IMG/VR virus record: IMGVR_UViG_3300042923_000569
Location: 186,001 to 250,000 of that record
Reading direction: 5' to 3' (one strand)
DNA: 64,000 bases
Positions 34,682 through 52,121 of the stretch are shown in pieces. Below the pieces are notes generated by a model that saw only the letters and a list, made by a program, of their open reading frames with translations, was not told the origin of the DNA and made no database searches. The position numbers and the translations under genes are program-made. The stretch's first letter is position 1. Each line of letters opens with the position of its first letter.

Positions 34682-34758
34682 TTGACAGGCCACCAGCACT
34701 AAGGCATAATTAACACACAGACGGCGAAACGTCTTTGACCCATAGGGTGCGGAGCTAT
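34682..34758 (+). ncRNA. promoter-hairpin-CCCATAGGGTGC unit 1 (Chi in promoter spacer)
   Basis: TTGACA-17-CATAAT; AGACG-GCGAAA-CGTCT; motif at 34739-34750; no ORF downstream. Confidence 0.55.
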
Positions 34759-34795
34759 ATAAAAAATAAAAGTACTATCCAATAGATAGATCTAT

Positions 34796-34865
34796 GCACC
34801 CTATGGGCTTAGTGGCTGTATCTGCCAATGAGATAAGTATAGCAAAAAGGGCTGACCGAAGTCAA
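34796..34865 (-). ncRNA. promoter-hairpin-CCCATAGGGTGC unit 2
   Basis: TTGACT-18-TATACT; TGGC-AGATACA-GCCA; motif at 34796-34807. Confidence 0.55.
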
Positions 34866-34873
34866 CCCCTTTT
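34844..34873 (-). terminator. UUCG terminator with an embedded -35 box
   Basis: GGGGTTGAC-TTCG-GTCAGCCC-TTTTT. Confidence 0.7.
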
Positions 34874-34889
34874 ATGTAATTCTTTTTGG

Positions 34890-35060
34890 TTATGCTGGCT
34901 GGTGATCGTGACGGCCTTTAGTGTAGGCGTCCTCTAATTCTTTACGTTGCCAGGTATCGAGTGAGTTAAACAAAAGGCGGTTATCATTATCAACCGGGCG
35001 GTTGTTGGTTCCTAATTCGTACCAACGTACTTTCAACATTTCTAAATCTACTTGAACCAT
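34890..35060 (-). CDS. 56-aa protein, paralogue of 35156..35365
   Basis: MVQVDLEMLKVRWY...LFNSL...ELEDAYTKG; below the ORF-track cutoff; AAGGA RBS. Confidence 0.65.
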   Translation of the reverse strand: MVQVDLEMLKVRWYELGTNNRPVDNDNRLLFNSLDTWQRKELEDAYTKGRHDHQPA

Positions 35061-35155
35061 TTTGTACTATCCTTATGGACTCATTGTAACGATTATATAA
35101 TGTGGGTTATACTAAGTCAACCCTATTGATATTATTTTTTATTATGACTGGAATT

Positions 35156-35365
35156 TTAGAATGTCTTTACTGTTGGTAGTACTGTTGATTGCATCCACGT
35201 TTCTGATTCATCGTTGACGCCGTACAGATAGGCTTTCTTTAGTTCAGCCTGGATGTGGGATGGAAGGGAATCGAATAGTTCTTTGTCTTTCCCAATGATT
35301 GGATTTCCTGCAACTGCCTGCTTGTACCAACGGATTTTTAAAGCTTCGACTTGACTGTTTTGCAT
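35156..35365 (-). CDS. small early protein
   Basis: LKIRWY...LFDSL...ELKKAYLYG. Confidence 0.7.
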   Translation of the reverse strand: MQNSQVEALKIRWYKQAVAGNPIIGKDKELFDSLPSHIQAELKKAYLYGVNDESETWMQSTVLPTVKTF

Positions 35366-35533
35366 TGTTGGCCTACACCTTTCTTTGTTTTGTTAAGAAC
35401 ATCTTATCGGATTCCTCTTAATCTGTCAACTACCTTGACGAATTTTATTTTATGGTCTACCGTCAGGCTTAGTTGAGATATAAAAAAAGAGGTTGACAAT
35501 TGCCAACCTCTGTGAATCTAAACGTGTAATAGG

Positions 35534-35878
35534 TTAAACGCTGTATGTTTCGATCTGATGCTGCTTGATCGCATTGCGTTGTACTGCATCCAATTTATTA
35601 AACGCTGGCGATCCGTATGCAGGTTCGATCTGAGTCCAGTTTTCCAGGTTGATAGGTTGCCCGTATGCGATAGCCTGAAGCATACGCATAATGCGACGGT
35701 TCTGGATATCACGGATTTCCCGATCCGTTTTATCTTCATCTGACAACAGAGAAGATTCCAGCTTGAAGCGGCGACCATTGTAATCTTGTCCAGCGATTAC
35801 ATATTCAGTACTGTTATTTTTACCCGGCGACGTCATTACAAACAAGTTCATCTTCATGTAATTATCCTCCATAAACAA
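35534..35878 (-). CDS. hypothetical early protein
   Basis: GGAGG RBS; consensus promoter upstream. Confidence 0.7.
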   Translation of the reverse strand: MFMEDNYMKMNLFVMTSPGKNNSTEYVIAGQDYNGRRFKLESSLLSDEDKTDREIRDIQNRRIMRMLQAIAYGQPINLENWTQIEPAYGSPAFNKLDAVQRNAIKQHQIETYSV

Positions 35879-35887
35879 TATAATATG

Positions 35888-35921
35888 ATTATAGGCTAAG
35901 GGCTGACGGTTGTCAACCCTT
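35888..35921 (-). promoter_or_regulatory. consensus sigma70 promoter fused to a hairpin
   Basis: TTGACA (35911-16)-17-TATAAT (35888-93); -35 lies in the stem AGGGTTGAC/GTCAGCCCT. Confidence 0.8.
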
Positions 35922-35937
35922 TTTTTATATTTTAAAC

Positions 35938-36840
35938 TTAAAAATCGAGAAGTTCTTCAGGTTCGGCGTTTTTCAGTGCCAGCCTCTGATCTACCAGGTT
36001 CATCGCCATTTGCCAGAGTGAGCTATTCAACACGATGTTTTTATCAATGTTGGTGATAGCACGGCTGGTGCGTTTGCGTCCTGTTTCTGGATTGAAGCCT
36101 GACTGCCCGCCTTGCATCAAATGCTGTTGAACCGTATTAAAAGTACTATACAGGGAATTATCGTATTTGTCAGTACTATTTAAGCCTTTATGTGATAAAA
36201 GTGAACGCGGCTGGAATACGGCGTTTGTGAAATCACCGTTAAGCGGCATACCTTCTTTTAACACATACGCGGCAATGGCGAATGAATCACGTTCTGAAAT
36301 GTTCAGATCAATCTGTTTCATTTCTTCTTTATAACGTTCAATATCATCAAAGTCTTTTACTACAGTGTAAACACCTTCGATAACATCATCCATAACGCCT
36401 TTGCCTTTCGTGCCATTACCTTTGTGATAGATTTTAGTATTGTGTGACATATCACCCATTACTAAACCATTAGCACAAACAAAGCGAAATTGTCCCGCCA
36501 TTAACTGGTAAGCACTTGTACCATCATTGGCATTCACCAAAATGATTTCGTTTGCTTCACCTTCAACCTTACCAGGCTGACGGAAACGGATCATATGTTT
36601 AGTATAATCACGTTTGGTAGTATCGCGTACTTTTGCCTGTATCGCGTACATAGGAAAATAGTTTTCTTGTGCCAGGCGATCAACAATGTCAATCGTTGCC
36701 ACTGGTGCAAATCTTGATGACCGGCTTTCGTGCCCTTCAACTGCGAAGATTGAAGGAACCACTTCTAACAGTTCAGTACGGTTCAATGGACGGTTATCTT
36801 TAAGGGCAAAGCCGTTGATTCCTTGATACATTTTGTTCAT
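35938..36840 (-). CDS. DUF932/DUF945 family protein
   Basis: PSIFA.E.HESRS.RF, KHMIRFR, EIILVNANDGTSAYQLMAG.FRFVCANGLV. Confidence 0.85.
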   Translation of the reverse strand: MNKMYQGINGFALKDNRPLNRTELLEVVPSIFAVEGHESRSSRFAPVATIDIVDRLAQENYFPMYAIQAKVRDTTKRDYTKHMIRFRQPGKVEGEANEIILVNANDGTSAYQLMAGQFRFVCANGLVMGDMSHNTKIYHKGNGTKGKGVMDDVIEGVYTVVKDFDDIERYKEEMKQIDLNISERDSFAIAAYVLKEGMPLNGDFTNAVFQPRSLLSHKGLNSTDKYDNSLYSTFNTVQQHLMQGGQSGFNPETGRKRTSRAITNIDKNIVLNSSLWQMAMNLVDQRLALKNAEPEELLDF

Positions 36841-36910
36841 GGGATAGCCTCTAAGCATTAAGTTTTTAAATTATAATATGCTAAACTTTAATTGTCTAGC
36901 ACATTTGAGA

Positions 36911-37108
36911 TTATTTTTTATTCAGTTCAATTGATAAAGCATCAAACTCTTTCTGTTGAGTACTGGTAAGATCCACCAGCCAACTTACAGAAACCTCTAC
37001 ACGATAGCCATAATCAATCGCATAGATTGTGTTATCCAGAATCAGAGGCTGAATCGAGGGAAACTTTTCAGCTACCGCTGTATTGATGTTCAGTACTTTG
37101 CACCCCAT
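36911..37108 (-). CDS. small early protein
   Basis: own promoter cassette upstream. Confidence 0.6.
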   Translation of the reverse strand: MGCKVLNINTAVAEKFPSIQPLILDNTIYAIDYGYRVEVSVSWLVDLTSTQQKEFDALSIELNKK

Positions 37109-37230
37109 TTCTTCAACCCCTGTTCTGTTTCGATGTAGTAATAATAGTACTTTTATAAGTTAAACGCAAGTACTTTTTAAATTAAAAGTATAATTATTTG
37201 AAATTATTTTATTAGTACTGCTACAATACA

Positions 37231-37300
37231 GCACCCCAATGGGTTAGTAGCTGTATCTGCCAATGAGATAAGTATAGCAAAAAGGGCTGACCGAAGTCAA
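37231..37300 (-). ncRNA. promoter-hairpin-motif unit 3 (variant CCCATTGGGGTGC)
   Basis: TTGACT-18-TATACT; near-copy of unit 2. Confidence 0.5.
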
Positions 37301-37323
37301 CCCCTTTATTAAGAATTTTGGAT

Positions 37324-37902
37324 TTAAATGTAAGTTACTGAATGGTCAGTTTCTTCGAAATCAATATCATTTGCAATGATTGATTCCTTGACATTTTCGT
37401 CAGAAATCAGGTCATAATAACATTTGTCCAGGTCGAAGTAGTACGCATCGCCAGCGGCTTTAATGTACGCGTCAATCTCTAATTGCAATTTGTCATAAAG
37501 AGATTGCTGTTTTGGTGAAAGGTCATTTTGCCAATCACCATCCATTTCCGCTGAAGTAGTATTTGAATGGTAGTAGCGACTTGAACCACGAACCACTTTA
37601 CAAGAAATATCGTTGCCCTTGATCAGTTCATGCAACAGGCGATAATGTGACCAGTGTTTTGCTGCACGTAAAAACTTTTCAATGTCAACGTTATCAGCGG
37701 TAAAACTTGCACCATCGCCCTGGCTGCAAAAGCCGGAGTACTGAGATTCTACATCTTCAAAGCCAACGGCTTTCAGTTTATCATGATGTTCAGCGGTTAC
37801 GTGTTCGCACCAACCATCATAATCAACGTTAATATCTCTGTGCTTGTCAAGTGCTTTGGCCTGTTGCTGTGCGTTCAGTTCGTTGAATTTCATGATGTTC
37901 AT
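37324..37902 (-). CDS. conserved phage/plasmid hypothetical protein
   Basis: YSGFCSQGDGASF and YYHSNT motifs. Confidence 0.75.
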   Translation of the reverse strand: MNIMKFNELNAQQQAKALDKHRDINVDYDGWCEHVTAEHHDKLKAVGFEDVESQYSGFCSQGDGASFTADNVDIEKFLRAAKHWSHYRLLHELIKGNDISCKVVRGSSRYYHSNTTSAEMDGDWQNDLSPKQQSLYDKLQLEIDAYIKAAGDAYYFDLDKCYYDLISDENVKESIIANDIDFEETDHSVTYI

Positions 37903-38100
37903 CTCAATTAAAATGGTTAGGAACTATTCCTTAACCTTGAATACATTATACATTACTACGTTAAACTTGCAAGTACTTTCTAGTAGATAATCAGGTAAAT
38001 TATGAAGATAATTACTATCAGTACTTTTACCATTTTTTCCATCTGCATGGCTACTATATGTGCTAGGCTCTTAGTACTGTATAGTACTACATAACGTTTC

Positions 38101-38325
38101 TTAGTGGACATACCTCATTGCCCCAAATGTAAGAGGGGTATTAACAACACTAACTTTTGTGATAATAAGGTTAGGTTCAATCCCGTTAAAGTAGCGAAGT
38201 GCGAACACTGTATCGCCCATTGAATAGTCTTCACGTAAACAAATAGGTTGCAGTACTTCAGACATTTGTCTATCTTCATCTGAAGGTTCTTCAAAAATAA
38301 TCTTCTTTAAAAAGTCTTCAATCAT
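38101..38325 (-). CDS. small early protein
   Basis: AAGGA RBS. Confidence 0.6.
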   Translation of the reverse strand: MIEDFLKKIIFEEPSDEDRQMSEVLQPICLREDYSMGDTVFALRYFNGIEPNLIITKVSVVNTPLTFGAMRYVH

Positions 38326-38435
38326 TACCGTATTCCTTTATGTTGTGGTATGAAACTAATCTTAGTACAACTTATTAGTACTTGCAAGAATTATTTTAGT
38401 ACAATATATAACCTATAACTAACAAATATATCTAT

Positions 38436-38504
38436 GCACCCTATGGGTTAGTAGCGGTATCTGCCAATGAGATAAGTATAGCAAAAGGGGCTAACCTAAG
38501 TCAA
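38436..38504 (-). ncRNA. promoter-hairpin-CCCATAGGGTGC unit 4
   Basis: TTGACT-18-TATACT; motif at 38436-38447. Confidence 0.5.
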
Positions 38505-38518
38505 CCCCTTGTTTAAAA

Positions 38519-38860
38519 TTATTTGCAAGTATAGATAACTTTAGCGGGAACATACTTACCAGTACTTTCATCCGGGATCGCAGTTTCCATAGTATATTTG
38601 TTATGGATGCGGTCTGAAATGATCCGGCCTGTATCGTTTCGGTAATCGTTACCGTCTTTCCAGAATTCCAGGGCATGACCGTGACTAGTCAAAGTAACTT
38701 TTGGTTGAGTAAGTTCAATCGTTGAACCTACAGACATAGGAACATTACTTGCGACTGTGTTCCCATTAACGATCAGTGTTTGAGTACTACAGGTTAGTAC
38801 TTCAGCTTGAACGGACAGTGACAGTACTGATAAGATACCAAAGGCGATTAACTTTTTCAT
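38519..38860 (-). CDS. secreted/periplasmic protein
   Basis: MKKLIAFGILSVLSLSVQA signal peptide; one Cys pair. Confidence 0.7.
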   Translation of the reverse strand: MKKLIAFGILSVLSLSVQAEVLTCSTQTLIVNGNTVASNVPMSVGSTIELTQPKVTLTSHGHALEFWKDGNDYRNDTGRIISDRIHNKYTMETAIPDESTGKYVPAKVIYTCK

Positions 38861-38929
38861 TTTATAATCCTGTTCAGTTGATATAGTTATTATAATAAAA
38901 AAGGCTGACAAACGTCAACCTCTTTTTGA

Positions 38930-39454
38930 TTATTCTATAGTACTATTTAAAATTGCGTTCTGTATGTATTCCATAATTTCATATTGGTCTACATTGTCTT
39001 TTGATGTAATTTCTTGCATTGCACGATATGCCGCGAAGACGCCAGCTTTAAATTTAGCTGGTGGCACTGCTTTGAGAGAATTCACTATACTAGATAAGTA
39101 ACCTGGATTATTAGCAAAGATTCTCGCTAAGTCCTGGGTTAGAGCTTGTACTTTTGTTCTACTGTTATGTACTGGATCTTTCGGAGCTTCTTCTGGTTCA
39201 GCGGTAGGAGTTGAACCCGGCATAAGCCCTAATGATTTAAAGTACTTTAACTTTTCTTCAGGCTTCATTTTTGACGTATCGATACCCTGAGAAGGCATTG
39301 TGTTTAATTTGCCTTGCATTCCTGTACCCTGATTACGTTTACCTTTGCTACCTTGTCCGGCGTCGTGACTGTTTGCACTGCGTTCACTGTTCGACCACTT
39401 ATCAGAGTGTCCTGAAAGTGTTGCACCGTTTTTACTTCTGAATGTTCCAGGCAT
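38930..39454 (-). CDS. hypothetical protein
   Basis: start moved to MPGTFRS. Confidence 0.65.
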   Translation of the reverse strand: MPGTFRSKNGATLSGHSDKWSNSERSANSHDAGQGSKGKRNQGTGMQGKLNTMPSQGIDTSKMKPEEKLKYFKSLGLMPGSTPTAEPEEAPKDPVHNSRTKVQALTQDLARIFANNPGYLSSIVNSLKAVPPAKFKAGVFAAYRAMQEITSKDNVDQYEIMEYIQNAILNSTIE

Positions 39455-39511
39455 AATAAAAAATCCCCAATATGTTATAAAGTTTATTATAATCATATTT
39501 AGGGATTATGT

Positions 39512-39754
39512 CTACCGCCGTTCAACGAATTTGTTATACTGTTCATGCGTCATTAGGTTTAGTACTTCATCCCGGATCACAATGCGTTCATTGTGTGATA
39601 CGTCAAGTACTTTAAACAATCCACAACCTAACTTCCTGGCATGAATAGATCCGCTTTTGTATCCGGTCACAACCTTGATCGCTTTGTCAAGTATCTTTGT
39701 TTGTACTTTAAAGTGCAATCGAAGTTGTATATCTTGAATCATTATCCGCTTCAT
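39512..39754 (-). CDS. ParE/RelE-fold-like small protein
   Basis: ARKL...LDV....RI......LMTHEQYNK resembles stand-alone ParE-like phage proteins. Confidence 0.4.
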   Translation of the reverse strand: MKRIMIQDIQLRLHFKVQTKILDKAIKVVTGYKSGSIHARKLGCGLFKVLDVSHNERIVIRDEVLNLMTHEQYNKFVERR

Positions 39755-39798
39755 AGATACACCTTCTAAGGGGCTTGTCAAGCCCCCTACGATTGATT

Positions 39799-40263
39799 TT
39801 AAGCACTTTTCGCAATGGACTGAGCCAGACGGATAGGCACAAGTGAGCGGCGATACATGACGCGTACACGCTTATCATTAGGGGTAGTTAGTACTTGTTC
39901 ACCGATGATCCCTGCGATAATCTTACGTACTTCTTTCACTGCAACGTGAGCAACTTCTACAACTTTCTTTTCAAAGTTGTTTGCATTCAGGAAGGAAATA
40001 CGATCCTTAATTGCTGGTGCTGGTTTAGCAACATCAACAGCTTTAAGAGCGGCAGCCAGGCTTGCAGTAGTTTCTGAATGAATCTCTACTGAATGCTCTT
40101 TCGCTGGAATTGCTGGTGCAACTTCAACCGCTGCAACTACTTCAGACAGTACAGCCCAACGTTCACCGGCTGCTGCATCTTTACCAAAATCTTTGACTTT
40201 GCCGCCGTTCTCTGAAGCGAAGTTACGAGCCAGGGTGCGTGATGCGAAGAATTCAGTTCTCAT
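39799..40263 (-). CDS. hypothetical early protein
   Basis: FASRTLAR...GKVKDFG...GERW. Confidence 0.75.
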   Translation of the reverse strand: MRTEFFASRTLARNFASENGGKVKDFGKDAAAGERWAVLSEVVAAVEVAPAIPAKEHSVEIHSETTASLAAALKAVDVAKPAPAIKDRISFLNANNFEKKVVEVAHVAVKEVRKIIAGIIGEQVLTTPNDKRVRVMYRRSLVPIRLAQSIAKSA

Positions 40264-40338
40264 TTTTTCAATCTCTCTTGTGTGGTTGATGTGATAATTA
40301 TAAGTTCTTTCGGGTTTTAGTGCAAGTACTTTTTAAAT

Positions 40339-40671
40339 TTAATTTTTAATACATTCTACACTGTAATCGATTGTTGTATCATCAGTTGGTTTTACATAAA
40401 ACATCTTTTCTTCTTCCGTCTGGTATCCAGTAAGTGTCACTTTCATACCATCAAAATAAGAATCAGTTTTGATACGGTTTACTACTTCAGGCGATACTGT
40501 CAAGTTATAATTAACAGGATAGTAATCCTCTCTGGCACCACTTACTTTACAAACATAATTAGGATTAGTAAATGATTTAAATTTATTATATCCTTCTTTA
40601 AGTACTGGATGAATAACAAAACCACATACTGAGCTTACTAATACAATTGCAATCAAAGACGAAGTTTTCAT
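40339..40671 (-). CDS. membrane-anchored/secreted protein
   Basis: N-terminal hydrophobic segment. Confidence 0.65.
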   Translation of the reverse strand: MKTSSLIAIVLVSSVCGFVIHPVLKEGYNKFKSFTNPNYVCKVSGAREDYYPVNYNLTVSPEVVNRIKTDSYFDGMKVTLTGYQTEEEKMFYVKPTDDTTIDYSVECIKN

Positions 40672-40743
40672 TATTATATTCCAGTTCAGTTTATATTATA
40701 AAGTACTCTGATTATATAAAGTACTTTGACTAATATCCACTAA

Positions 40744-41190
40744 TTAAACGTAATTATATTTGCTAATATATGTTTTAACATTAGAAGATAATTCTTCCAA
40801 CATTACGCCAGCATCCTCACCTTTATAATTACAAAGTTGAACAAAGCGAATACCATTATCTAATAGATCTTCTGCGATTGAATACATAGCCTCAATTGCT
40901 GATCTATCTTCCATGTAATTACTTTCCATCATTTCCCGGCGTTCTTCTGGCGTCAGTGGGATATAAGTACCGGCAGCAATTGCCAATGATTCTGCAACAA
41001 CATCGCGGTACTCTCTGCGAATTTCCATTGTCATATGAGGATCATTCACTGACAGAGTATCACCCAAGGTAAAAGATTCTGCTGATTTGTAAACTGAAGA
41101 ATATACAGCTTCAGCTTCAGCCAGACAAGTTTCAATCCCGTAAGTACTTTCGATTGCTTGCAATGCTTCAGCCAGTTTCTTGAGTTGCAT
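40744..41190 (-). CDS. hypothetical acidic protein
   Basis: own promoter cassette upstream. Confidence 0.7.
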   Translation of the reverse strand: MQLKKLAEALQAIESTYGIETCLAEAEAVYSSVYKSAESFTLGDTLSVNDPHMTMEIRREYRDVVAESLAIAAGTYIPLTPEERREMMESNYMEDRSAIEAMYSIAEDLLDNGIRFVQLCNYKGEDAGVMLEELSSNVKTYISKYNYV

Positions 41191-41335
41191 TTTCTTATCC
41201 CCTGTACGATTCGCCGTGAACCGTTTCGATGTAGTAATAATAGTACTTCTGAATGTTTAATGCAAGTACTTTTTAAATCGAAAGTATAATTTTTGATGTA
41301 AAAAAAAAGCCTCGACAATGCGAGGCTTTTGTGGG

Positions 41336-42190: not shown

Positions 42191-42200
42191 TGAAAACCTC

Positions 42201-42449: not shown

Positions 42450-42451
42450 TT

Positions 42452-42688: not shown

Positions 42689-42719
42689 ATTCTACCTGCT
42701 TTTGTCAGTGTGTCAACAG

Positions 42720-44577: not shown

Positions 44578-44621
44578 TTTATAACCTCCTGTTATGGGGG
44601 ATAGTTAATCCCCCGGTGTGG

Positions 44622-44942
44622 TTAGTCGTCTGGAGTTTCTACATCATATGCGGGTTCAATTTTTTCCCCGGTGTGATCATCATAGAGATCATCATTTTCA
44701 TAATTCACTTCAACCCCGACGATATGCCATTGACTATCATCGGGATCATTAAAGTTAACTTTGTGATACTCATTGATAACAGTATCGATAGCCAGGCAAC
44801 CGCCATCAGCAGTTACAAAGTACTGGTACTTTTCATAACCGCCGGAATTGAAGCCCCAATTGATTGACGGCGTACCGTCATCCAATCTGATAGCCTGGCC
44901 GATGAATTCATTTTCGAAATTGCTTTGAGTATTCGATAACAT
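44622..44942 (-). CDS. small acidic early protein
   Basis: YFVTADGGCL...VNYE...LY pattern. Confidence 0.7.
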   Translation of the reverse strand: MLSNTQSNFENEFIGQAIRLDDGTPSINWGFNSGGYEKYQYFVTADGGCLAIDTVINEYHKVNFNDPDDSQWHIVGVEVNYENDDLYDDHTGEKIEPAYDVETPDD

Positions 44943-45250
44943 GGCTGTATTCCTATCTCGTTTAAAGTAACTACATTATAAAGTACTTGATGACATATTA
45001 CAAGTACTTTTAATGTTTACTGATCCCAATAATTCTGTAAAGATTGATATGTGATTTTATATTGATTAGCCGCTAACATTAACGCATCAGTTTCTGTTTT
45101 CCCTTCCTGTTGCATAAGATGCCAGGCATAATCACTAGCTAATTCATAATCGGATGAATCAAACGCTTCTTCTCTCATATGTTGTTCCTTTCGTTTAAAG
45201 TAACTACATTATAAAGTACTCGCGAATATATGCAAGTACTGTTAATGTTT

Positions 45251-45520
45251 TTACGCTAATAAATCTGCCAGGATGTTATCGCGTTTCATTACTTCTTTTA
45301 CATAATATCGATAATGAGTAACAGCGGCAATGTAAGTTTCAAAATCAAGGTATTCAGTTTTACCGGCGATCTGTGCTGTTACATAATAACCGATTTTAAT
45401 ATGTTCGCCGTGAAAATTAAAAGAATCTTTTTGAGTCAGTACTACAATATCCTTTTGAGTAGACAATCTAGCAACTTCAGTATCTTTTGAATCAAACTCG
45501 CAAGTATCTTTAAATGACAT
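45251..45520 (-). CDS. small early protein
   Basis: own promoter and GGAG RBS. Confidence 0.65.
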   Translation of the reverse strand: MSFKDTCEFDSKDTEVARLSTQKDIVVLTQKDSFNFHGEHIKIGYYVTAQIAGKTEYLDFETYIAAVTHYRYYVKEVMKRDNILADLLA

Positions 45521-45630
45521 TTTTCTTTCTCCGTCTCGTTTCGATATAAGTAAGTATACTCTCTTTTAGTTTATGTACAAGTACTTTTTAAATTAAAAGT
45601 ATAATTATATTTTTTAACGGGCACACTTCA

Positions 45631-45698
45631 GCACCCTAATGGGTTTGACCGTTTCGCCGGATTAAGATAAGTATACTAAAAGGGCTGACTTGCGTCAA
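45631..45698 (-). ncRNA. promoter-hairpin-motif unit 6 (variant CCCATTAGGGTGC)
   Basis: TTGACG-17-TATACT; CCG-GCGAAA-CGG. Confidence 0.5.
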
Positions 45699-45711
45699 CC
45701 CCTTTTTTCAA

Positions 45712-46011
45712 TTATTCTTCCATCTGTTGCTGATCATATACATCACCGCTAGCAATCCATAGCAGTTTAACATACAAATCAGTATCGGATTCATTTTCTA
45801 ATTCGTCATCATCCCATGCACCAGTTTCTAACAGTACTGATACAATCTTTTCGCGAGGTATCGCCTGCAATGTTTCCAGGAAGTAAGGAAGTTCTGCTTT
45901 AACAGATTCTTCACAGTCGCCTGCATGATGCATAGAATAGACCTGATCCAGATCTCTGAATGTAAACTCAATCTTACCACAAGATGACGTGTACCAGATT
46001 TGATCTTGCAT
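45712..46011 (-). CDS. small acidic early protein
   Basis: start moved to MQDQ; HAGDC, ETGAWDDDEL, LLWIA. Confidence 0.7.
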   Translation of the reverse strand: MQDQIWYTSSCGKIEFTFRDLDQVYSMHHAGDCEESVKAELPYFLETLQAIPREKIVSVLLETGAWDDDELENESDTDLYVKLLWIASGDVYDQQQMEE

Positions 46012-46094
46012 TTTGTTTTCTCTCAATTAAAAGTAAGTCAGTAACTACATTATAAAGTACTCGCAGTAATAAGCAAGTACTTTTGATAATGTTT

Positions 46095-46439
46095 TTACGA
46101 TTCGTCTGCCATACTATCCACCAGCTCATAAACCGGCTTAAGTAATGCATCAAACGCCGCATGATCACCGCTAGCAGTATTAGCGATTAAATCAATACCA
46201 TCATTGCCGTTATTATAGATAAGCAGTATAGAACCGATTTGATAAGGATCATCTTTCTTTAATACGCGGAGCCAGTCCAGTCCAGTACTGTTAAGGGCTT
46301 CTTTGATTGTGCTAACATCACTTGAACGGCGTAACACGAACTCCTCACCATCAAAAATGCTAACCTCATAGCCACCAGCAAAAACAGTACTCAAAATACA
46401 ATCAATGATTCTGTTTTCGTTTTCCAGGAGTGCAGCCAT
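46095..46439 (-). CDS. small early protein
   Basis: GYEVSIFDGEE...STGLD pattern. Confidence 0.7.
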   Translation of the reverse strand: MAALLENENRIIDCILSTVFAGGYEVSIFDGEEFVLRRSSDVSTIKEALNSTGLDWLRVLKKDDPYQIGSILLIYNNGNDGIDLIANTASGDHAAFDALLKPVYELVDSMADES

Positions 46440-46526
46440 AATATCCTCTCAATTAAAAGTAATTCGTTTGCAGTAACTACATTATAAAGTACTCGCTAGT
46501 TAATGCAAGTACTTTTGATAATGTTT

Positions 46527-46919
46527 TTACTTATTCAGATAACGATGAAAGTAATACATAGGGGAATGTTGGCGATCTTTCGCTGGCGGTACTTTGTACT
46601 TACAAAGCTCATAAACCTTTTGCATCATCTGGATATCAGACGCTGGCAATGCATAGTACTCAGTCTTTTTAACATCAATCGCGAAGTGTTGAAGTAGTAA
46701 AGCCCTGGCTGATTCAGCACTTAAGCCAGTGTGAAGAATAGCGGCTTTTTCTTCAAATGCTTTAAGCATTTGCTCGTTAGGCAAATTCTTACGTGGTAAC
46801 GCATTGATAGTTGCCTTATGGAATTTCTTACCATTGGCTAACAGCAATTCATGTACTGACATTTCTTTGCCATTGAACAAGAAACAAAAACCGTTTTCAT
46901 AACCTCTGACTTCTAACAT
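46527..46919 (-). CDS. small early protein
   Basis: AATTGAGAGG leader. Confidence 0.7.
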   Translation of the reverse strand: MLEVRGYENGFCFLFNGKEMSVHELLLANGKKFHKATINALPRKNLPNEQMLKAFEEKAAILHTGLSAESARALLLQHFAIDVKKTEYYALPASDIQMMQKVYELCKYKVPPAKDRQHSPMYYFHRYLNK

Positions 46920-46925
46920 AGTAAT

Positions 46926-47348
46926 CCTCTCAATTAAAATTAACTACTCAATAAGTTTATTATATAGTACTCGCTTGTTATTGCAAGTACTATCGAACTA
47001 CTTATTATGATTATCATTGTACAGGCGATCACATAATCGCCCATGATAAACCCGCCCATTCTTTAAACGTTTACCCAAAGGCATAAACCATTTAAGATGG
47101 AAACCAGTAAGAAAGATTATATCTTTCATTCGGAAACTTCTACAGTCCAGCCTTTATAGGCGTCGATGTAATTGATCCAGTCCTGGTCATTCCAACGGGC
47201 AGTAGTTACACCAGGAGCTTTAAACTTGTAATGTCCAGCTTTATATGCTTCCATCTTAGTCATGTATCACCTCTCAATTAAAATTAACTACTCAATAAGT
47301 TTATTATATAGTACTCGCTTGTTATTGCAAGTACTATCGAACTACTTA
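46926..47348. repeat. 79-bp perfect direct repeat of a promoter/RBS cassette (46926-47004 and 47270-47348)
   Basis: identical CCTCTCAATTAAAATT...AGTACTATCGAACTACTTA copies. Confidence 0.85.
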
Positions 47349-47747
47349 CAGATCTTTTTTACGCTTCACATCATTGCAGTTATCATAGTAAGGAATCGAT
47401 AACATATTACACAACGTGTACAGGGTACGCACACGAACATTGTCAAAATCAACAAAGTTCCCCTGTACTGCTTCGCGGAAAATAGTATAACCAGTGTATT
47501 CATACTGATTACCATGCCCAGGCATAAACTCATTGCGAACTACATCGATCCAGACCTGTTCACCTTCAGGCCGGTTATAGTGGTTAGCGTTTAACTCGTT
47601 TGCCTTTTCCACATCAACCAGGCAGGCGACATAAGTACTGTGATACGTTACGCCTAATGAATCAGTCCAGCGATTACCAGTAAGAGTAATGCCCTTGATA
47701 TCTTCCAGGGTTAAACGTGCGATTGTGATTCTAGTATCTTTGTCCAT
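47346..47747 (-). CDS. small early protein
   Basis: RW.D..G.TYHS...G.QYEYT...V.RKKDL pattern. Confidence 0.7.
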   Translation of the reverse strand: MDKDTRITIARLTLEDIKGITLTGNRWTDSLGVTYHSTYVACLVDVEKANELNANHYNRPEGEQVWIDVVRNEFMPGHGNQYEYTGYTIFREAVQGNFVDFDNVRVRTLYTLCNMLSIPYYDNCNDVKRKKDL

Positions 47748-47874
47748 CTGGTAAACCTCTCAGTTAAAATTGTGTATCTCGTTTCGATATAAAAGATTAT
47801 ACGCGATTCTAGTTTATGTGCAAGTACTTTTTAAAATGAATTTATAATTATATTTTTTTAATGGGTATAACTCT

Positions 47875-47942
47875 GTACCCTATGGGCTAAGCCATTTCTC
47901 TGGCGTATGAGTACTATAACAAAAGAGGCTAACTTTCGTCAA
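47875..47942 (-). ncRNA. promoter-hairpin-motif unit 7 (CCCATAGGGTAC)
   Basis: TTGACG-18-TATAGT; GCCA-GAGAAA-TGGC. Confidence 0.5.
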
Positions 47943-47959
47943 CCCCTTTTGATAATTAA

Positions 47960-48415
47960 TTATAGATACTTTTCAGGGATAGAATCTTGCTGAATGATTT
48001 GCTTTTCAGCCGCGAGTTCTGTTACAAACTCTTTCAGCTTTTTAAAGTACTTGTCATAACCCGCGATTACTTTATCAGCATCGCCTTTAATCTTGCGTAC
48101 TGCAATCTTGCGGCTTTCAGCGTACATATGCGGCTTTTCAGTAATGCAAGTTACCCAGGCACCGTCAAATTCAACTTCCAGATCCTGGAGTTCAACTTCT
48201 GAATCATTAAACTTGATTCCTTTGTGAATGTATGACCGGAAAGTTACTGGATCATTCATTCTGATTTTTGCGGAAACATCATTAATGTCGCCAATCAAAC
48301 CGCAGAAGATAGCAATACCGCCACCTAGTGCTAGTGGGCTGATTCGAATACTTCCATTAGGAAAGTACTTCAGAAATGATTCTGTTACTGCTGCCTGGAG
48401 TTCGTTGGCTTTCAT
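47960..48415 (-). CDS. hypothetical early protein
   Basis: start moved to MKANE. Confidence 0.7.
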   Translation of the reverse strand: MKANELQAAVTESFLKYFPNGSIRISPLALGGGIAIFCGLIGDINDVSAKIRMNDPVTFRSYIHKGIKFNDSEVELQDLEVEFDGAWVTCITEKPHMYAESRKIAVRKIKGDADKVIAGYDKYFKKLKEFVTELAAEKQIIQQDSIPEKYL

Positions 48416-48497
48416 GTTCTGTTCTCTCAATTAAAAAGTTACTATATAACTAATTATAAAGTACTCGCTAGTTAATGCAAGTACTTTTGATAATTAA

Positions 48498-48941
48498 TTA
48501 TTCAACAGTTCCCGCCAGGATCTCTCCTACGCGTACCATTTCATAACGATCAACGATTGATAAAGATAGCTTAGTATCTTTTTGGCGTACACTATACCAG
48601 GTATCACCTTCAAACACATAACGGGTAATGTTTTTGTTTGCGATAAGGAACATCAACCATGATTTAGTAGTTAGTGGCTCTGTGCCAGTTTCACCACGAT
48701 CACGCCCATAAGCTACAGTATAGCCAGGAACCTTTTTATTGAAGCTGTGACCTTCTGGACACTCGATAGATTTATCCAGTACTGACAGATCACCCAGGGC
48801 GATTAGTGCCTTTGCACGTTCTGCATCGTTGTAATGCTCAACTAACATTCTACCAGTGTGACCGATATAGCCATCATAGTTTACAGATGACCAGGTAACA
48901 TGTTCGCCGTCTTTGATTGCAATAACTGCTGGAGTACCCAT
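48498..48941 (-). CDS. conserved phage early protein
   Basis: MGT...YDGY..HTG..L..HY...LI.LGDLSVL...YGRDRGE. Confidence 0.75.
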   Translation of the reverse strand: MGTPAVIAIKDGEHVTWSSVNYDGYIGHTGRMLVEHYNDAERAKALIALGDLSVLDKSIECPEGHSFNKKVPGYTVAYGRDRGETGTEPLTTKSWLMFLIANKNITRYVFEGDTWYSVRQKDTKLSLSIVDRYEMVRVGEILAGTVE

Positions 48942-49097
48942 TTTTAAATCCTCTCAATTAAAAGTAACATCGTCTCGTTTCGATATAGGTAATTATATAG
49001 TACTGGTAATCGAAAGCAAGTACTTTTTAAAATAAAAGTATAATTAAGAATCAAAAATAAATTTGCATCTAAAGAAAAATGATGATACGATGTTTAT

Positions 49098-49192
49098 GCG
49101 GCGAAAATGTGAGGTTCGCCGCAAGTCCAACGAATGATAACGCATTGTATTACTTTATAGGATAGCTATGGGTTTGCTATCCTTTTTTTTTT
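49098..49192 (+). ncRNA. candidate ~95-nt small RNA
   Basis: TTGCAT-17-TACGAT (extended -10) promoter; 8-bp 5' hairpin; unpaired core; AGGATAGC/GCTATCCT terminator plus a long T run; no ORF. Confidence 0.6.
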
Positions 49193-49207
49193 ATTTTCGA
49201 AAAGGTA

Positions 49208-49282
49208 TTGACTCCACCAGCCAAATAACCGATAATCACATCAAGACGGCGAAACGTCCTTTCCCATAGGGTGCGGAGCTAT
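49208..49282 (+). ncRNA. promoter-hairpin-CCCATAGGGTGC unit 8 (Chi in spacer)
   Basis: TTGACT-17-GATAAT; GACG-GCGAAA-CGTC; motif at 49263-49274. Confidence 0.55.
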
Positions 49283-49319
49283 GTCTTTAAAGTACTAATT
49301 TTCTTACGGGTATTCCTCT

Positions 49320-49387
49320 GCACCCTATGGGCTACGCCTTTGTCTCGGCTTGTATGTATTATTGCATTTTTCGGGGATTGAAGTCAA
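49320..49387 (-). ncRNA. promoter-hairpin-CCCATAGGGTGC unit 9
   Basis: TTGACT-18-AATAAT; GCC-GAGACAAA-GGC; motif at 49320-49331. Confidence 0.5.
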
Positions 49388-49405
49388 CCCCCGATTTGTA
49401 AAGAT

Positions 49406-49762
49406 TTATTCTTCTTGCGTTACACATTCCAGGCGGTAAGTACTGAAATGTTTACGGAATAAATCGCAAGCCTGATCGCCGTTTTCCGCTTGCATTATAA
49501 TCGAACCTTCTCGATTATTTTTAATATCGAAATATGTTACTATCCAGCCACGCGTTTTGATTTCAGATAGTGGCAAGTGAATTGATCCACCGCTGGTTAA
49601 TTGACCTTCAGGATCTTTGTTGATTGCTTCCTGGTCGATAGTCAGTGAATAGTTTTCACCATCTACAACGTGGAACAATTCAACAATCGGATCGATGTTT
49701 CCACGTTTGTTTGCGATGCGTTCCAGTGTAGAAAGTACTCCGCGAAGTTCTGATAATCTCAT
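49406..49762 (-). CDS. small early protein
   Basis: 118-aa ORF. Confidence 0.7.
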   Translation of the reverse strand: MRLSELRGVLSTLERIANKRGNIDPIVELFHVVDGENYSLTIDQEAINKDPEGQLTSGGSIHLPLSEIKTRGWIVTYFDIKNNREGSIIMQAENGDQACDLFRKHFSTYRLECVTQEE

Positions 49763-49801
49763 TTAAAATTTACTCTCGTTTGTTGGTGTGTGGTAATAGT
49801 A

Positions 49802-50203
49802 CTATACTACTTCAGAAGTAGCAAGAATATTTTCAAAGTATTCGATTAAATCACAAAGTAACTTGTAGCGAAGTTTACCAGGTTCAGAATCCATTACGCA
49901 AAGGTTACGCTGATTCCAATGTAAGTTAACAGCCCGATTAACATCATTATCAGTTAATTGCATTTCAACCGGATAACCGCAGTGTAAACCCATTTCCACA
50001 AATACAGGCTGCAAGTATTCGTGATCGATCCCGGTAACTTCACTGTTAGGAGTGTGGGCGAATACGTGCCAGCAGATACCATGCTGTCTGGTTAGGTTGA
50101 ATGATTCACCGTTGATAGTGGTGTAAGTAACATCACGATCTAAACAGTCTTTCATTGCTGTTAGTACTTTCAGGACTAAAACTGCCTGCTCTGTACGTTT
50201 CAT
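49802..50203 (-). CDS. small early protein
   Basis: start moved to MKRTEQ; GIC...YPV...R..L pattern. Confidence 0.7.
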   Translation of the reverse strand: MKRTEQAVLVLKVLTAMKDCLDRDVTYTTINGESFNLTRQHGICWHVFAHTPNSEVTGIDHEYLQPVFVEMGLHCGYPVEMQLTDNDVNRAVNLHWNQRNLCVMDSEPGKLRYKLLCDLIEYFENILATSEVV

Positions 50204-50337
50204 TGTATTGCCTCTCAATTAAAATTTGTTTTGTTTCGATACAGGGAAGTTTACACTACTCGAAAGTTTATACAAGTACTTTTATAAAATATTTTTAAAC
50301 TCTCTGTAACGCATTCTAAGCGATTTAAAGTACTGCC

Positions 50338-50619
50338 TTACACCTTCAACGATTGAACGTTAAAAGCCCCGCTAATAGGCTTACACGCAAGATCTATAGC
50401 ATAGTTCGCTTTCTTGTGGATTATGTACATACACGAATCAAACTGATGATTATACGGCATATCATAAACCCGGCGTTGTACAAGTTCACCACTAACAACA
50501 AAGGCCAGGTAGCCGCTGAAGGTACAACTACGCGGGCCAGCACTGGTCATCGTTTTAGCAATACGGGTACGGGGATCAATCAGGGACGAAATAGGCTTAA
50601 GGTTAAGATTGTTATTCAT
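50338..50619 (-). CDS. small early protein
   Basis: start moved to MNNNL. Confidence 0.6.
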   Translation of the reverse strand: MNNNLNLKPISSLIDPRTRIAKTMTSAGPRSCTFSGYLAFVVSGELVQRRVYDMPYNHQFDSCMYIIHKKANYAIDLACKPISGAFNVQSLKV

Positions 50620-50766
50620 GGCGTTTAGTCTCAATTAAAAGGTAGAATCTAAAACGCTCTGTAATCAATTCTAAGCGTTTCTAATAGTACTTTAAGCGAA
50701 TGTATCACAGTACTATTAGAAATGCTTAGCGGGGCATATAGCCCCGCCATGCTGTATTACTTTGTA

Positions 50767-51411
50767 TTACGCGGCGGTATCTTCAGAGGCTACGCGGAAA
50801 GTTTCGATGAAAGTTTCGCGGTCCATGTTTTTAGAAGCTACCAGATCTTTGAGTTCCTGGCTCATGTTGCCTTTTTCCGGCATATCGTACTGTTTGCCAT
50901 CGACTTCAACAGTGACGCGGTTGTATGCGTTGTTGCTGCCGGTAAGTGACGCTTTGATCTTCTTACCTACACCAGCAACCGCCGCCTGAGCTACTGCCAG
51001 ATCCACGCCACCAGCTACCAGAAGTTTGAGCATTTTTTCACGTTCTTCTTTCGCTTTCTCTTCCGCTTCAGCGTTCAGACGTTCACGTTCTGCCTGAGCT
51101 TTAACGCGGGCTTCTTCGCGGGCCGCTTCAGCACGTGCGGCTTCTTCTTTCTGGTACTGTACAGCAGCCGGGATTGCTTTAGACGCTGCAACCAGAATTT
51201 TAGAAATCACGTCAGTGTCAGTTGTTTTATCAACAAAGTACTGAGCCAGGTTAGTCGCAACAGTGTTTACGTGATCAGCAATGTCTGCTTTGTGCTGAGC
51301 CAGTACTTCTTTACTGTGTGTCTTACCTTCTTCCGGTGCCGCCAGGGTAGGAGCCTGAGCGAACAGGATTGAATTCAGTGTTACTTTAGGAGCTTTAGAA
51401 GTGTTAGTCAT
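50767..51411 (-). CDS. Ala/Glu/Lys-rich coiled-coil protein with a small C-terminal domain
   Basis: 214 aa; codon use suggests high expression; first gene of the leftward early region. Confidence 0.8.
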   Translation of the reverse strand: MTNTSKAPKVTLNSILFAQAPTLAAPEEGKTHSKEVLAQHKADIADHVNTVATNLAQYFVDKTTDTDVISKILVAASKAIPAAVQYQKEEAARAEAAREEARVKAQAERERLNAEAEEKAKEEREKMLKLLVAGGVDLAVAQAAVAGVGKKIKASLTGSNNAYNRVTVEVDGKQYDMPEKGNMSQELKDLVASKNMDRETFIETFRVASEDTAA

Positions 51412-51670
51412 GATATTACCCTCGAATTTTTTAAGTTAATTTGTTTGGCCTGATTGTTTCGGCTTGATTAAAATTTAAACTACTTGTTTCTTTCAGTCAA
51501 CTACTATTTTCAACTTTCAAGAAACTTTTTTTCTTTCTATCGTCTGGAGCATTTCGCCCTTTCGATAACCAACATCTTACACCATCCTTTCTAACTAGCA
51601 AGTACTTTTTAAAAACTTTTTTTCGTTCTATCCAAAAGAGAGTTTCTATCTTCAGGACTTGCTAGCCAGG

Positions 51671-51683
51671 TTGTTAAAGAGCG
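51671..51683 (-). promoter_or_regulatory. boxA antitermination element
   Basis: CGCTCTTTAACAA on the minus strand, ~20 nt past a TTGCAG-16-TACTAT promoter. Confidence 0.65.
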
Positions 51684-51941
51684 GTGTTCCGTGTTGATGT
51701 GGTAATAGTACACTAACCATAAAACTCTGCAAGCACTTTCTTATAAAAACTTATAACTTTTTTCATTCGTCGTTTTTCTTCCTTTATACGCGTAAAGAAA
51801 CCCACAACACATAGGAAGCATTTACAGCCCTTTAAAGTACTAATCTAAGTGTTTACCAGGCGTAATCCTCCAGCCTCTTATAGTGCGTCCTATGCGTTCC
51901 TATATAGAAGAAACTATTTTCAATCTTTTTAAAGAAAATGC

Positions 51942-52012
51942 TTGCTTCTCTGATTCAGTACTGTATAATCTTTTATATCGAAGCGAAATTCGTTATCCCA
52001 TAGGGTGCGGAG
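51942..52012 (+). ncRNA. promoter-hairpin-CCCATAGGGTGC unit 10
   Basis: TTGCTT-16-TATAAT; CGAA-GCGAAA-TTCG; motif at 51997-52008. Confidence 0.55.
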
Positions 52013-52045
52013 ATCCGTCTATTGCTTTTTTACTTTTTCCTGGGT

Positions 52046-52121
52046 ATAGCTCCGCACCCTATGGGAAAGGCCATTTCGCTGGCTTGTACGTATTATTGCA
52101 TAATTCGATCAGTACTGTCAA
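52046..52121 (-). ncRNA. promoter-hairpin-CCCATAGGGTGC unit 11
   Basis: TTGACA-18-AATAAT; GCCA-GCGAAA-TGGC; motif at 52054-52065. Confidence 0.55.

What the first reader, a model, noticed from the sequence alone, without database searches (positions are those of the whole stretch)
34739..52065. Convergent unit pairs keep their motifs exactly 45 bp apart
Seen: in all three head-to-head pairs the inverted 12-mers flank exactly 45 bp of otherwise divergent, AT-rich DNA (34751-34795, 49275-49319, 52009-52053); two spacers carry a central AGTACT. Fixed length with free sequence implies a geometric constraint. Inference: a symmetric nucleoprotein site, such as a bidirectional origin primed by two convergent transcripts over an unwinding element, a recombination or end-processing site, or a read-through RNA with a 12-bp stem presenting a 45-nt variable loop.
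Basis: partly seen in the sequence, partly recalled or inferred. Interest (0 to 1): 0.85.

Follow-up and report, generated by a model that had tools for sequence, protein, structure and literature searches.

The report
Face-to-face phage small-RNA promoter pairs
The 12-letter motif is the core of a small structured RNA made from strong host-type promoters in the terminal repeat of a Rak2-like jumbo phage. Where two such units face each other, their distance is held at exactly 45 bp (56 or 63 bp in some relatives) for a reason not yet known.

Summary
CCCATAGGGTGC occurs 8 times exactly, and the three head-to-head pairs each enclose 45 bp. In about 12 related jumbo phages from at least 5 genera, every convergent pair found has a spacer of 45, 56 or 63 bp and no other length. 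Spacer sequences diverge, and indels in them are compensated, so length is under selection.

The motif is not a free-standing DNA site. It lies about 20 nt downstream of a sigma-70-type promoter, between a 5' hairpin with two-sided covariation and a second G.U-tolerant helix. Stand-alone antisense copies run straight into intrinsic terminators, so they look like genes for RNAs of about 95 nt. All units lie inside the predicted 19.9-kb direct terminal repeat, which is the early region.

A pair is one gene-sense unit facing one antisense unit. Their transcripts would overlap by about 106-110 nt, and each would fold a 12-17 bp stem around the spacer. I read the pairs as antisense or convergent-transcription control modules of early operons.

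The cause of the exact spacing is unresolved. An end-processing role is refuted by position. An origin role has no support but was not tested. No Rfam family or published description matches the unit.

The parts
34739..34807 (.). Convergent pair 1: 12-mer (+) 34739-34750, 45-bp spacer 34751-34795, 12-mer (-) 34796-34807
34682..34764 (+). Antisense unit of pair 1: promoter TTGACA-17-CATAAT at 34682-34710, RNA module (5' hairpin, 12-mer, helix 2) at 34717-34764
34782..34865 (-). Gene-sense unit of pair 1: promoter TTGACT-18-TATACT at 34865-34836, RNA module at 34829-34782
34849..34873 (.). Terminator-like hairpin GGGCTGAC-CGAA-GTCAACCCC with T-runs on both sides. It contains the -35 of the sense promoter and is the likely 3' end of the antisense RNA of pair 1.
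   Evidence: Sequence. The orthologous hairpins are annotated as ARNold terminators in GAP32 and G17.
49263..49331 (.). Convergent pair 2: 12-mers 49263-49274 (+) and 49320-49331 (-), 45-bp spacer 49275-49319
49208..49288 (+). Antisense unit of pair 2: promoter 49208-49236, RNA module 49241-49288
49306..49387 (-). Gene-sense unit of pair 2: promoter 49387-49358, RNA module 49353-49306. The hairpin at 49372-49393 overlaps its -35.
51997..52065 (.). Convergent pair 3: 12-mers 51997-52008 (+) and 52054-52065 (-), 45-bp spacer 52009-52053. It lies 993-1061 bp from the predicted left genome end.
51942..52022 (+). Antisense unit of pair 3: AGTACT-type promoter (TTGCTT 51942-51947, TATAAT 51964-51969), RNA module 51975-52022
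52040..52121 (-). Gene-sense unit of pair 3: promoter 52121-52092, RNA module 52087-52040
43111..43241 (+). Stand-alone antisense unit, a candidate gene for an RNA of about 100 nt: promoter 43111-43139, module 43145-43192, two-way terminator hairpin AGTACTGG..CCAGTACT at 43218-43241
   Evidence: Orthologues are GAP32 24502+ and CBB 25031+.
38422..38504 (-). Single gene-sense unit: promoter 38504-38475, module 38469-38422
45617..45698 (-). Single gene-sense unit with a 2-mismatch motif: promoter 45698-45670, module 45665-45617
47861..47942 (-). Single gene-sense unit with a 1-mismatch motif: promoter 47942-47913, module 47908-47861
37223..37300 (-). Variant gene-sense unit (CCCATTGGGGTGC, one extra G): promoter 37300-37271. 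The module coordinates are approximate, and the covariance model did not detect it at E<0.1.
   Evidence: (repeat family D9)
33160..53058 (.). Predicted direct terminal repeat (19,899 bp) that contains all the units
   Evidence: Boundaries inferred from homology to the record starts of CBB, BF and fENko-Kae01, and to the annotated inner repeat boundaries of CBB and fENko-Kae01

Best explanation
The 12-mer is the invariant core of an RNA module about 50 nt long. Host RNA polymerase would make it from strong sigma-70-type promoters in the terminal repeat of a Rak2-like jumbo phage, which is the early region. The module begins 2-5 nt after the predicted start site. It has a 3-5 bp hairpin with an A-rich loop (GCGAAA, GAGAAA, AGAACAA or AGAUAA), a linker of about 4 nt, CCCAYAGGGUGC, and then a helix GGGUG:YRYCY. 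Gene-sense copies lie upstream of early genes. Antisense copies are small-RNA genes. A head-to-head pair is one sense unit facing one antisense unit. Each transcript reads through the other unit, so the two RNAs are complementary over about 106-110 nt, and each holds both the motif and its complement as a 12-17 bp stem around the spacer. In pairs 1 and 2 the antisense RNA would end at the terminator hairpin that holds the sense promoter's -35. The pair would therefore act as a cis-antisense or convergent-transcription control module on three specific early operons. Selection holds the distance between the two motifs, but what measures that distance is not established. What is shown: the anatomy, the covariation, the conservation, the length constraint and the position in the repeat. 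What is inferred: that the promoters fire, the RNA ends, the antisense regulation, and the reason for the spacing.
For: Every motif copy follows a consensus promoter at a near-fixed distance, and these promoters are among the best sigma-70 matches in the region. On 118 distinct units, all 4 pairs of helix 1 change on both sides, in 149 cells. The covariation score is 0.439 against 0.259 for shuffles, 0 of 500 shuffles reached it, and slid registers score 0.11 or less. Helix 2 is 96% paired and varies only as G-C to G.U and U-A to U.G. Stand-alone antisense cassettes run promoter, unit, then a strong intrinsic terminator within 40-60 nt and have no ORF. This is seen in RaK2, fENko-Kae01, G17, GAP32, CBB and at window 43111-43241. 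In every pair one unit is gene-sense and the other antisense, because all flanking genes share one strand. Predicted folds of the pair transcripts have z-scores of -3.7 to -5.8. The length constraint rests on three results. Only 45, 56 and 63 bp occur in the 33 pairs counted. The central 21 nt often cannot be aligned, and compensating indels are seen between the window and L001 and between the window and BF or Yen9-04. In contrast, an orthologous single unit shows an uncompensated 1-nt indel, the distance from the -10 box to the motif varies from 26 to 28 nt, and model hits range from 37 to 52 nt in length. A distant relative, PA5oct, has two abundant non-coding RNAs in its terminal repeat by RNA-seq (PMC7318152).
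Against: No transcript data exist for this phage or a close relative. The runs found were uninformative. Helix 2 has no two-sided covariation. Its purine/pyrimidine pattern could instead reflect protein contacts with DNA, and neighbouring unpaired positions 13 and 16 are also restricted to purines. Antisense control does not by itself require an exact spacer length, so the central observation is not explained by the proposed function. Pair 3 has no visible terminator for its antisense transcript. An attempt to show strand asymmetry from G.U against A.C pairs in helix 1 gave no support (the method was noisy).
Confidence: 0.5

Rival explanations
1. The 12-mer is a DNA operator for a phage or host protein. 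It sits just beyond the downstream edge of the open promoter complex, at about +21 to +32. In a pair, two bound proteins, or two polymerases stalled at them, must fit head to head, and this fixes the spacing. The RNA would be incidental.
For: CCCA and GGGTGC are 93-100% invariant in 83 units, which is more typical of protein recognition than of a helix. Exact spacing with free central sequence is the classic signature of protein-DNA geometry. The motif starts at a near-constant distance from the -10 box. The 56- and 63-bp classes add a second palindromic, operator-like site (AATGAKWMTCATT, Fur-box-like) at a fixed 21 nt from the antisense motif. A 45-bp gap is roughly twice the 20-22 bp that an elongating polymerase covers ahead of its active site (from my own knowledge, not tested).
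Against: Centre-to-centre distances of 57, 68 and 75 bp equal 5.4, 6.5 and 7.1 helical turns, so there is no common phase. The adjacent helix 1 shows true RNA-type covariation. Stand-alone units are organised as terminated small-RNA genes. No binding protein has been identified.
Confidence: 0.25
2. The pairs are replication origins. Convergent transcripts would form R-loops over the AT-rich centre and prime bidirectional synthesis, as at phage T4 oriF/oriG or the ColE1 RNA II primer with its antisense RNA I.
For: Strong promoters flank a centre that is about 80% AT. The phage belongs to a T4-related clade according to the CBB paper (PMC5259590). The overlap of about 108 nt, with the antisense RNA ending near the sense start, resembles the ColE1 RNA I/RNA II layout (from my own knowledge).
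Against: The same motif occurs singly 5 times in this window, in units that have no partner. The whole region is AT-rich (about 35% GC), so the centre is not distinctive. Nothing in the sequence marks an initiation site, and no replication data exist. The quantised classes of 45, 56 and 63 bp are not predicted by an unwinding element.
Confidence: 0.08
3. The constant spacing is inheritance only. The pairs descend from one duplicated palindromic module and have simply not yet drifted.
For: The pairs sit at syntenic positions in related genomes: about 1.0 and 3.7-3.8 kb from the left end, and about 1.6 kb from the inner repeat boundary.
Against: Central sequences of paralogues and of distant orthologues cannot be aligned, yet the lengths are identical. 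Alignments need compensating gaps. Flanking segments of similar size do show indels between the same genomes. No intermediate lengths were found anywhere.
Confidence: 0.07
4. The pair is a recombination or invertible element, or a site for processing the genome ends.
For: The pair-3 spacer is inverted relative to its flanking promoters between the window/L001 lineage and CBB/GAP32. The alignment score is 48 in flipped orientation against -6 in direct orientation.
Against: A 45-bp segment is too short for synapsis by known invertases (from my own knowledge). One inversion over long evolutionary time fits rare template switching at an inverted repeat. All five close relatives of the window phage carry the window's orientation. 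The repeat boundaries lie elsewhere (33160 and 53058) and have their own conserved sequences.
Confidence: 0.05

Closest known systems
Cis-antisense RNA control modules (ColE1 RNA I/RNA II, R1 CopA/CopT, hok/sok, lambda OOP/cII)
   Same: Face-to-face promoters about 110 bp apart. A short antisense RNA is complementary to the 5' part of a longer sense transcript and ends near the sense promoter. Both RNAs are predicted to fold into several stem-loops.
   Different: Here both partners carry the same conserved RNA module, which also occurs without any partner. The distance between the two modules is fixed to the base pair. The setting is the early region of a lytic jumbo phage, and no target function is known.
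Convergent-promoter interference switches (coliphage 186 pR/pL, P2 Pe/Pc)
   Same: Strong promoters face each other at short range in a phage early region.
   Different: Those switches decide between lysis and lysogeny and have no shared transcribed motif. No exact-spacing rule across genera has been described for them, to my knowledge.
Promoter-proximal RNA elements that act on polymerase (lambda nut boxB, HK022 put)
   Same: Small hairpins with purine-rich loops lie just downstream of early promoters, in an early region full of terminators.
   Different: No boxA was seen. The loops are 6-8 nt rather than a GNRA-like pentaloop. The units also face against the genes and are followed by terminators that they appear designed to stop at.
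E. coli BIME/RIP elements (inverted REP pairs with a fixed linker that holds an IHF site)
   Same: Two inverted copies of a short palindromic unit are separated by linkers of discrete fixed lengths, in intergenic DNA.
   Different: I saw no consistent IHF consensus when I inspected some of the spacers by eye. The units here carry their own promoters and a covarying RNA hairpin.
PA5oct ncRNA001/002 (abundant non-coding RNAs in the terminal repeat of a related jumbo phage)
   Same: Non-coding RNAs encoded in the long terminal repeat of a phage of the same broad clade, and highly expressed (PMC7318152).
   Different: I saw no CCCAYAGGGTGC motif or other resemblance to the unit in those loci.

Membership tests
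Any described RNA family (Rfam 15) | A match to a curated covariance model | tested here: not met
   There were no hits at gathering score in the whole window. At E<=5 in 33000-53500, no hit overlapped a unit.
Cis-antisense RNA control module | Two convergent promoters whose transcripts overlap | tested here: met
   Consensus promoters lie on both strands, with predicted start sites 106-110 bp apart. This is a sequence-level test only.
Cis-antisense RNA control module | The antisense transcript is short and has a defined terminator | tested here: inconclusive
   Terminator-like hairpins are present for pairs 1 and 2 (34849-34873, 49372-49393). None is seen for pair 3.
Cis-antisense RNA control module | Both RNAs are detected, and the antisense RNA changes sense expression | not testable with these tools
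   No usable RNA-seq data were found.
T4-type R-loop origin or ColE1-type primer | A promoter followed by a DNA unwinding element, with mapped initiation | tested here: inconclusive
   A promoter is present. The centre is AT-rich but so is its surroundings. Initiation cannot be tested here.
Lambda-type nut site | A boxA consensus plus a boxB hairpin with a GNRA-like pentaloop | tested here: not met
   No boxA-like element is seen next to the hairpin. The loops are 6-8 nt.
Invertible DNA switch | Inverted repeats flank a segment found in both orientations within one population, with an invertase | tested here: inconclusive
   The inverted repeats are present, and one inversion between lineages is seen. 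All five close relatives carry one orientation. No population reads were examined.
Genome-end (terminal repeat boundary) processing site | Coincidence with the physical ends or the repeat boundaries | tested here: not met
   The pairs lie 0.99, 3.7 and 18.3 kb from the predicted end. The boundaries are at 33160 and 53058.
CRISPR-like mini-array or guide-presenting element | Direct repeats flank spacers that match foreign or host DNA | tested here: not met
   The repeats are inverted. The two spacers tested (pairs 1 and 2) match nothing meaningful in E. coli genomes or phage records.
BIME/RIP-like element | An IHF consensus (WATCAANNNNTTR) in the linker | tested here: not met
   I inspected some of the spacers by eye. 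The only near match was in GAP32/CBB pair 1.

The most novel reading that the evidence does not exclude
The quantised 45/56/63-bp spacing may reflect a mechanism not yet described. In it, two host polymerases (or two copies of an unknown motif-binding factor) that start at facing early promoters are positioned against each other by the shared RNA/DNA module. This would form a defined head-on complex that gates early transcription, or DNA entry or replication, from the terminal repeat. In some genera it would be tuned by a Fur-box-like operator inserted at a fixed offset.
Probability: 0.12. Interest if true: 0.85.

Novelty: new variant of a known kind. Interest (0 to 1): 0.6.

Why it matters
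Rak2-like jumbo phages are common in enterobacteria and are candidates for phage therapy, yet their early programme is essentially unannotated. This work defines a conserved RNA module that appears undescribed. About 10 copies occur per genome, and about 120 were found across at least 6 genera. It marks the host-polymerase early promoters in the terminal repeat and predicts a set of small antisense RNAs. The base-pair-exact, compensated spacing of facing units is a rare kind of constraint and gives a clean experimental handle: spacer-length mutants and promoter knock-outs in GAP32, CBB or G17. It bears on how a 350-kb phage organises its first minutes of transcription.

Tried and rejected
1. 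Rfam at gathering and at permissive thresholds found no family for the units.
2. tRNA and tmRNA scan found none. A cloverleaf or tRNA-mimic reading of the 69-nt element was dropped, because a 12-bp closing stem and 45 interior nt do not fit.
3. Homology to E. coli genomes was sought for a unit and for a spacer, with no result. A spacer searched against phage records gave only a chance-level hit.
4. RNA-seq evidence was sought. No run holds this phage as RNA. Wastewater metatranscriptome contigs laid on a 121Q segment were a mixture of relatives with no transcript boundaries.
5. The PA5oct terminal-repeat ncRNAs showed no resemblance to the unit.
6. A central palindrome was tested as the cause of the spacing. 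Complementarity across the spacer centre is not consistent.
7. AGTACT as a specific centre mark was rejected, because the hexamer is about 12-fold over-represented throughout the window and its offset from the motif varies from 0 to 17 nt.
8. Helical phasing was rejected, because 57, 68 and 75 bp do not share a phase.
9. A small ORF across the pair was rejected, because 80 bp is not a multiple of 3.
10. A sigma-dependent pause element was rejected, because the A of a -10-like TAnnnT is not conserved.
11. CsrA or RegB sites (GGA or GGAG in the loop of helix 2) were rejected, because they are present in only about 60% of units.
12. A strand-asymmetry test on helix 1 (G.U against A.C) was noisy and gave no support.
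13. Pfam scans of the genes next to the units gave only DUF932.


Full report
**What the window is.** The window comes from a jumbo phage of the Rak2-like group. DNA matches are to Pectobacterium phage CBB (77%). Matches to Cronobacter phage GAP32 and to the 121Q/PBECO4/G17 group are limited to short non-coding pieces. The contig is IMGVR_UViG_3300042923_000569, 357,873 bp. Gene order matches the left ends of GAP32 and CBB in reverse orientation. Nearly all genes between 33 and 53 kb are small and lie on the minus strand.

**The observation.** The 12-mer CCCATAGGGTGC occurs 8 times exactly and twice with 1-2 mismatches. About 1.5 hits are expected at that stringency, and none of 100 shuffles reached 10. 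A further copy with one extra G follows the promoter at 37300-37271. Three plus/minus pairs enclose exactly 45 bp each.

**The unit around the motif.**
- Every copy lies downstream of a near-consensus sigma-70-type promoter. The -10 box ends 26-28 nt before the motif.
- Between the predicted start site and the motif lies a hairpin with a 3-5 bp stem and an A-rich loop (GCGAAA, GAGAAA, AGAACAA or AGAUAA), followed by a linker of about 4 nt.
- After the motif, 12 further positions follow a purine/pyrimidine pattern (R K A R N T V Y R Y C Y). The last five of these can pair with GGGUG of the motif.
- I built a covariance model from 48 units. It found 123 matches in 350 kb from 14 loci, and 8 more in RaK2.
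- On the resulting alignment, all four pairs of helix 1 change on both sides, in 149 cells. The covariation score is 0.439 against 0.259 for shuffles, and 0 of 500 shuffles reached it. Registers slid by 1-3 columns score 0.11 or less.
- Helix 2 is 96% paired, but only its 3' side varies (G-C to G.U, U-A to U.G). It is therefore compatible with an RNA helix but not proof of one.
- No Rfam family matches the unit, and no E. coli sequence resembles it.
- The CBB paper lists RpoD-like promoters in this region. A term search of that paper turned up no mention of a transcribed motif downstream of them (PMC5259590).

**Sense and antisense units.** All flanking genes share one strand, so each unit is either gene-sense or antisense.
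- Antisense units that stand alone run 40-60 nt past the motif into the two-way intrinsic terminator of the converging gene, and they have no ORF. Examples are window 43111-43241, GAP32 24502+, CBB 25031+, fENko-Kae01 3333- and 11026-, and G17 15236+. RaK2 has two especially clean cassettes. These look like genes for small RNAs of about 95 nt.
- Gene-sense units in the window are followed by a second promoter of a different class and only then by the gene.
- Other strong sigma-70 promoters in the region lead straight to a ribosome-binding site without a unit. The unit is therefore an optional RNA module, not part of the promoter.

**Position in the genome.** CBB and fENko-Kae01 have annotated direct terminal repeats of 22.5 and 19.7 kb. 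The first bases of the CBB, BF and fENko-Kae01 records (TATC..TTCCTGAAGTCG) have a counterpart ending at window 53058. The conserved sequence at the inner repeat boundary of CBB and fENko-Kae01 (AGCGTTACTGGCC) starts at window 33160. The predicted repeat is therefore 33160-53058, and it holds every unit. The pairs lie 0.99, 3.7 and 18.3 kb from the predicted left end. The end-proximal pair sits at nearly the same distance in CBB (1008-1076), BF (996-1082) and fENko-Kae01 (1002-1088). The pairs are not at the ends, so an end-processing role is not supported.

**The spacing rule in relatives.** I looked for convergent motif pairs within 150 bp in 13 loci. The loci cover the window lineage, GAP32, CBB, G17, Serratia phage BF, Yersinia phage Yen9-04, Erwinia phage Hallingskeid, fENko-Kae01 and three Munch/7t3-like metagenomic phages.
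- There were 26 pairs. Spacers were 45 bp (15 pairs), 56 bp (4) or 63 bp (7), and nothing else.
- Four metagenome loci add seven more 45-bp pairs. One of these loci, L131, comes from the same contig as L001.
- Pattern scans of all IMG/VR for spacers of 1-90 bp returned only these classes plus one unrelated hit.
- The central 21 nt often cannot be aligned between paralogues or genera.
- Alignments of orthologous spacers need compensating gaps. Between the window and L001, an A6 run against A5 is offset by AGG against GATG. Between the window and BF or Yen9-04, a +1 change is offset by a -1 change within 11 nt.
- Other segments do show indels between the same genomes. A single-unit orthologue has an uncompensated 1-nt indel. 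The distance from the motif to the terminator is 39, 41 and 39 nt in three orthologues. Model hits range from 37 to 52 nt in length.
- Length is therefore selected.
- The 56- and 63-bp classes contain a palindrome, AATGAKWMTCATT, that resembles the core of the E. coli Fur box. The resemblance is from my own knowledge. The palindrome always starts 21 nt after the antisense motif. These classes look like the 45-bp form with an inserted operator-like module.

**What a pair would do.** If both promoters fire, the start sites are 106-110 bp apart, and the two RNAs are complementary over that length. Each RNA contains the motif and its complement. Predicted folds give helix 1, a 12-17 bp stem around the spacer, and the complement of the partner's helix 1, with z-scores of -3.7 to -5.8. 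In pairs 1 and 2 the antisense RNA meets a terminator-like hairpin that contains the sense promoter's -35. The orthologous hairpins are annotated as terminators in GAP32 and G17. Pair 3 has no such hairpin. This layout is that of a cis-antisense or convergent-promoter control module, and I take that as the most likely function. Such control does not require a spacer exact to the base pair, so the key observation remains unexplained.

**Candidate causes of the spacing.** Three candidates remain: geometry of a factor bound to the motif as DNA, head-on positioning of two polymerases, or a structural need of the RNA stem-loop. Helical phasing does not unify the three classes (5.4, 6.5 and 7.1 turns). 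The spacer centre is not consistently palindromic. AGTACT in the spacers is not informative, because the hexamer occurs 257 times in the window against about 21 expected.

**Other readings.**
- An origin primed by the two transcripts cannot be excluded, but nothing specific supports it. The same motif occurs singly 5 times in this window.
- A recombination role has one hint. The pair-3 spacer is inverted relative to its flanking promoters between the window lineage and CBB/GAP32. Five close relatives all share the window's orientation, and 45 bp is too short for known invertases. Rare template switching is the simpler account.
- A guide-like variable loop has no support.

**Limits.** No transcript data could be obtained. 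All promoter, terminator and RNA-end statements are sequence-based. The terminal-repeat boundaries in the window are inferred by homology. Counts of pairs include orthologues and are not independent events. The independent evidence for length selection is the lack of alignable centres together with the compensating indels.

Noticed in passing
whole window, densest at 33000-53200: AGTACT occurs 257 times against about 21 expected from dinucleotide composition. In the terminal-repeat part the count is 106 against 6. No other 6-bp palindrome exceeds 2.5-fold. It occurs in coding and non-coding DNA alike.
   Followed up: partly
e.g. 37945-37972, 43577-43605, 46959-46986, 47303-47330 (minus strand): A second promoter class is repeated upstream of many small early genes. 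It carries AGTACT twice: AAAAGTAC-TTGCnn, about 10 nt, then AGTACT-n-TATAAT (repeat families D1-D8). It often lies directly downstream of a sense unit.
   Followed up: partly
53076-53155: Four tandem 20-bp repeats each begin with AGTACTGTTA. They lie about 20 bp outside the predicted left genome end (53058), so they could be part of the packaging or cutting region.
   Followed up: no
33148-33180 and 53041-53075: The predicted terminal-repeat boundaries are at 33160 and 53058. The sequences just outside the repeat are inverted copies of each other (..TCGCTA| and |TAGCGG..). The first roughly 200 bp inside the left end are conserved at the DNA level with CBB and BF.
   Followed up: partly
L124 1014-1076 and 7290-7345; L125 1008-1070; L129 19360-19415 and 19898-19960: The 56- and 63-bp spacers of relatives hold a palindrome like the Fur-box core (AATGATAATCATT and variants), always starting 21 nt after the antisense motif. 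The 45-bp spacers lack it.
   Followed up: partly
window 52009-52053 compared with L115 34212-34256: The pair-3 spacer is inverted relative to its flanking promoters between the window/L001 lineage and CBB/GAP32. A block of about 22 nt, identical in both, sits next to the opposite unit.
   Followed up: partly
46926-47004 and 47270-47348: A perfect 79-bp direct repeat (promoter plus leader) lies 344 bp apart, which suggests a recent tandem duplication of a small early gene cassette.
   Followed up: no
35938-36858 (-): The only gene with a recognisable domain among those tested next to the units is a DUF932 protein (E = 2e-31), orthologous to GAP32_039 and CBB_45.
   Followed up: no
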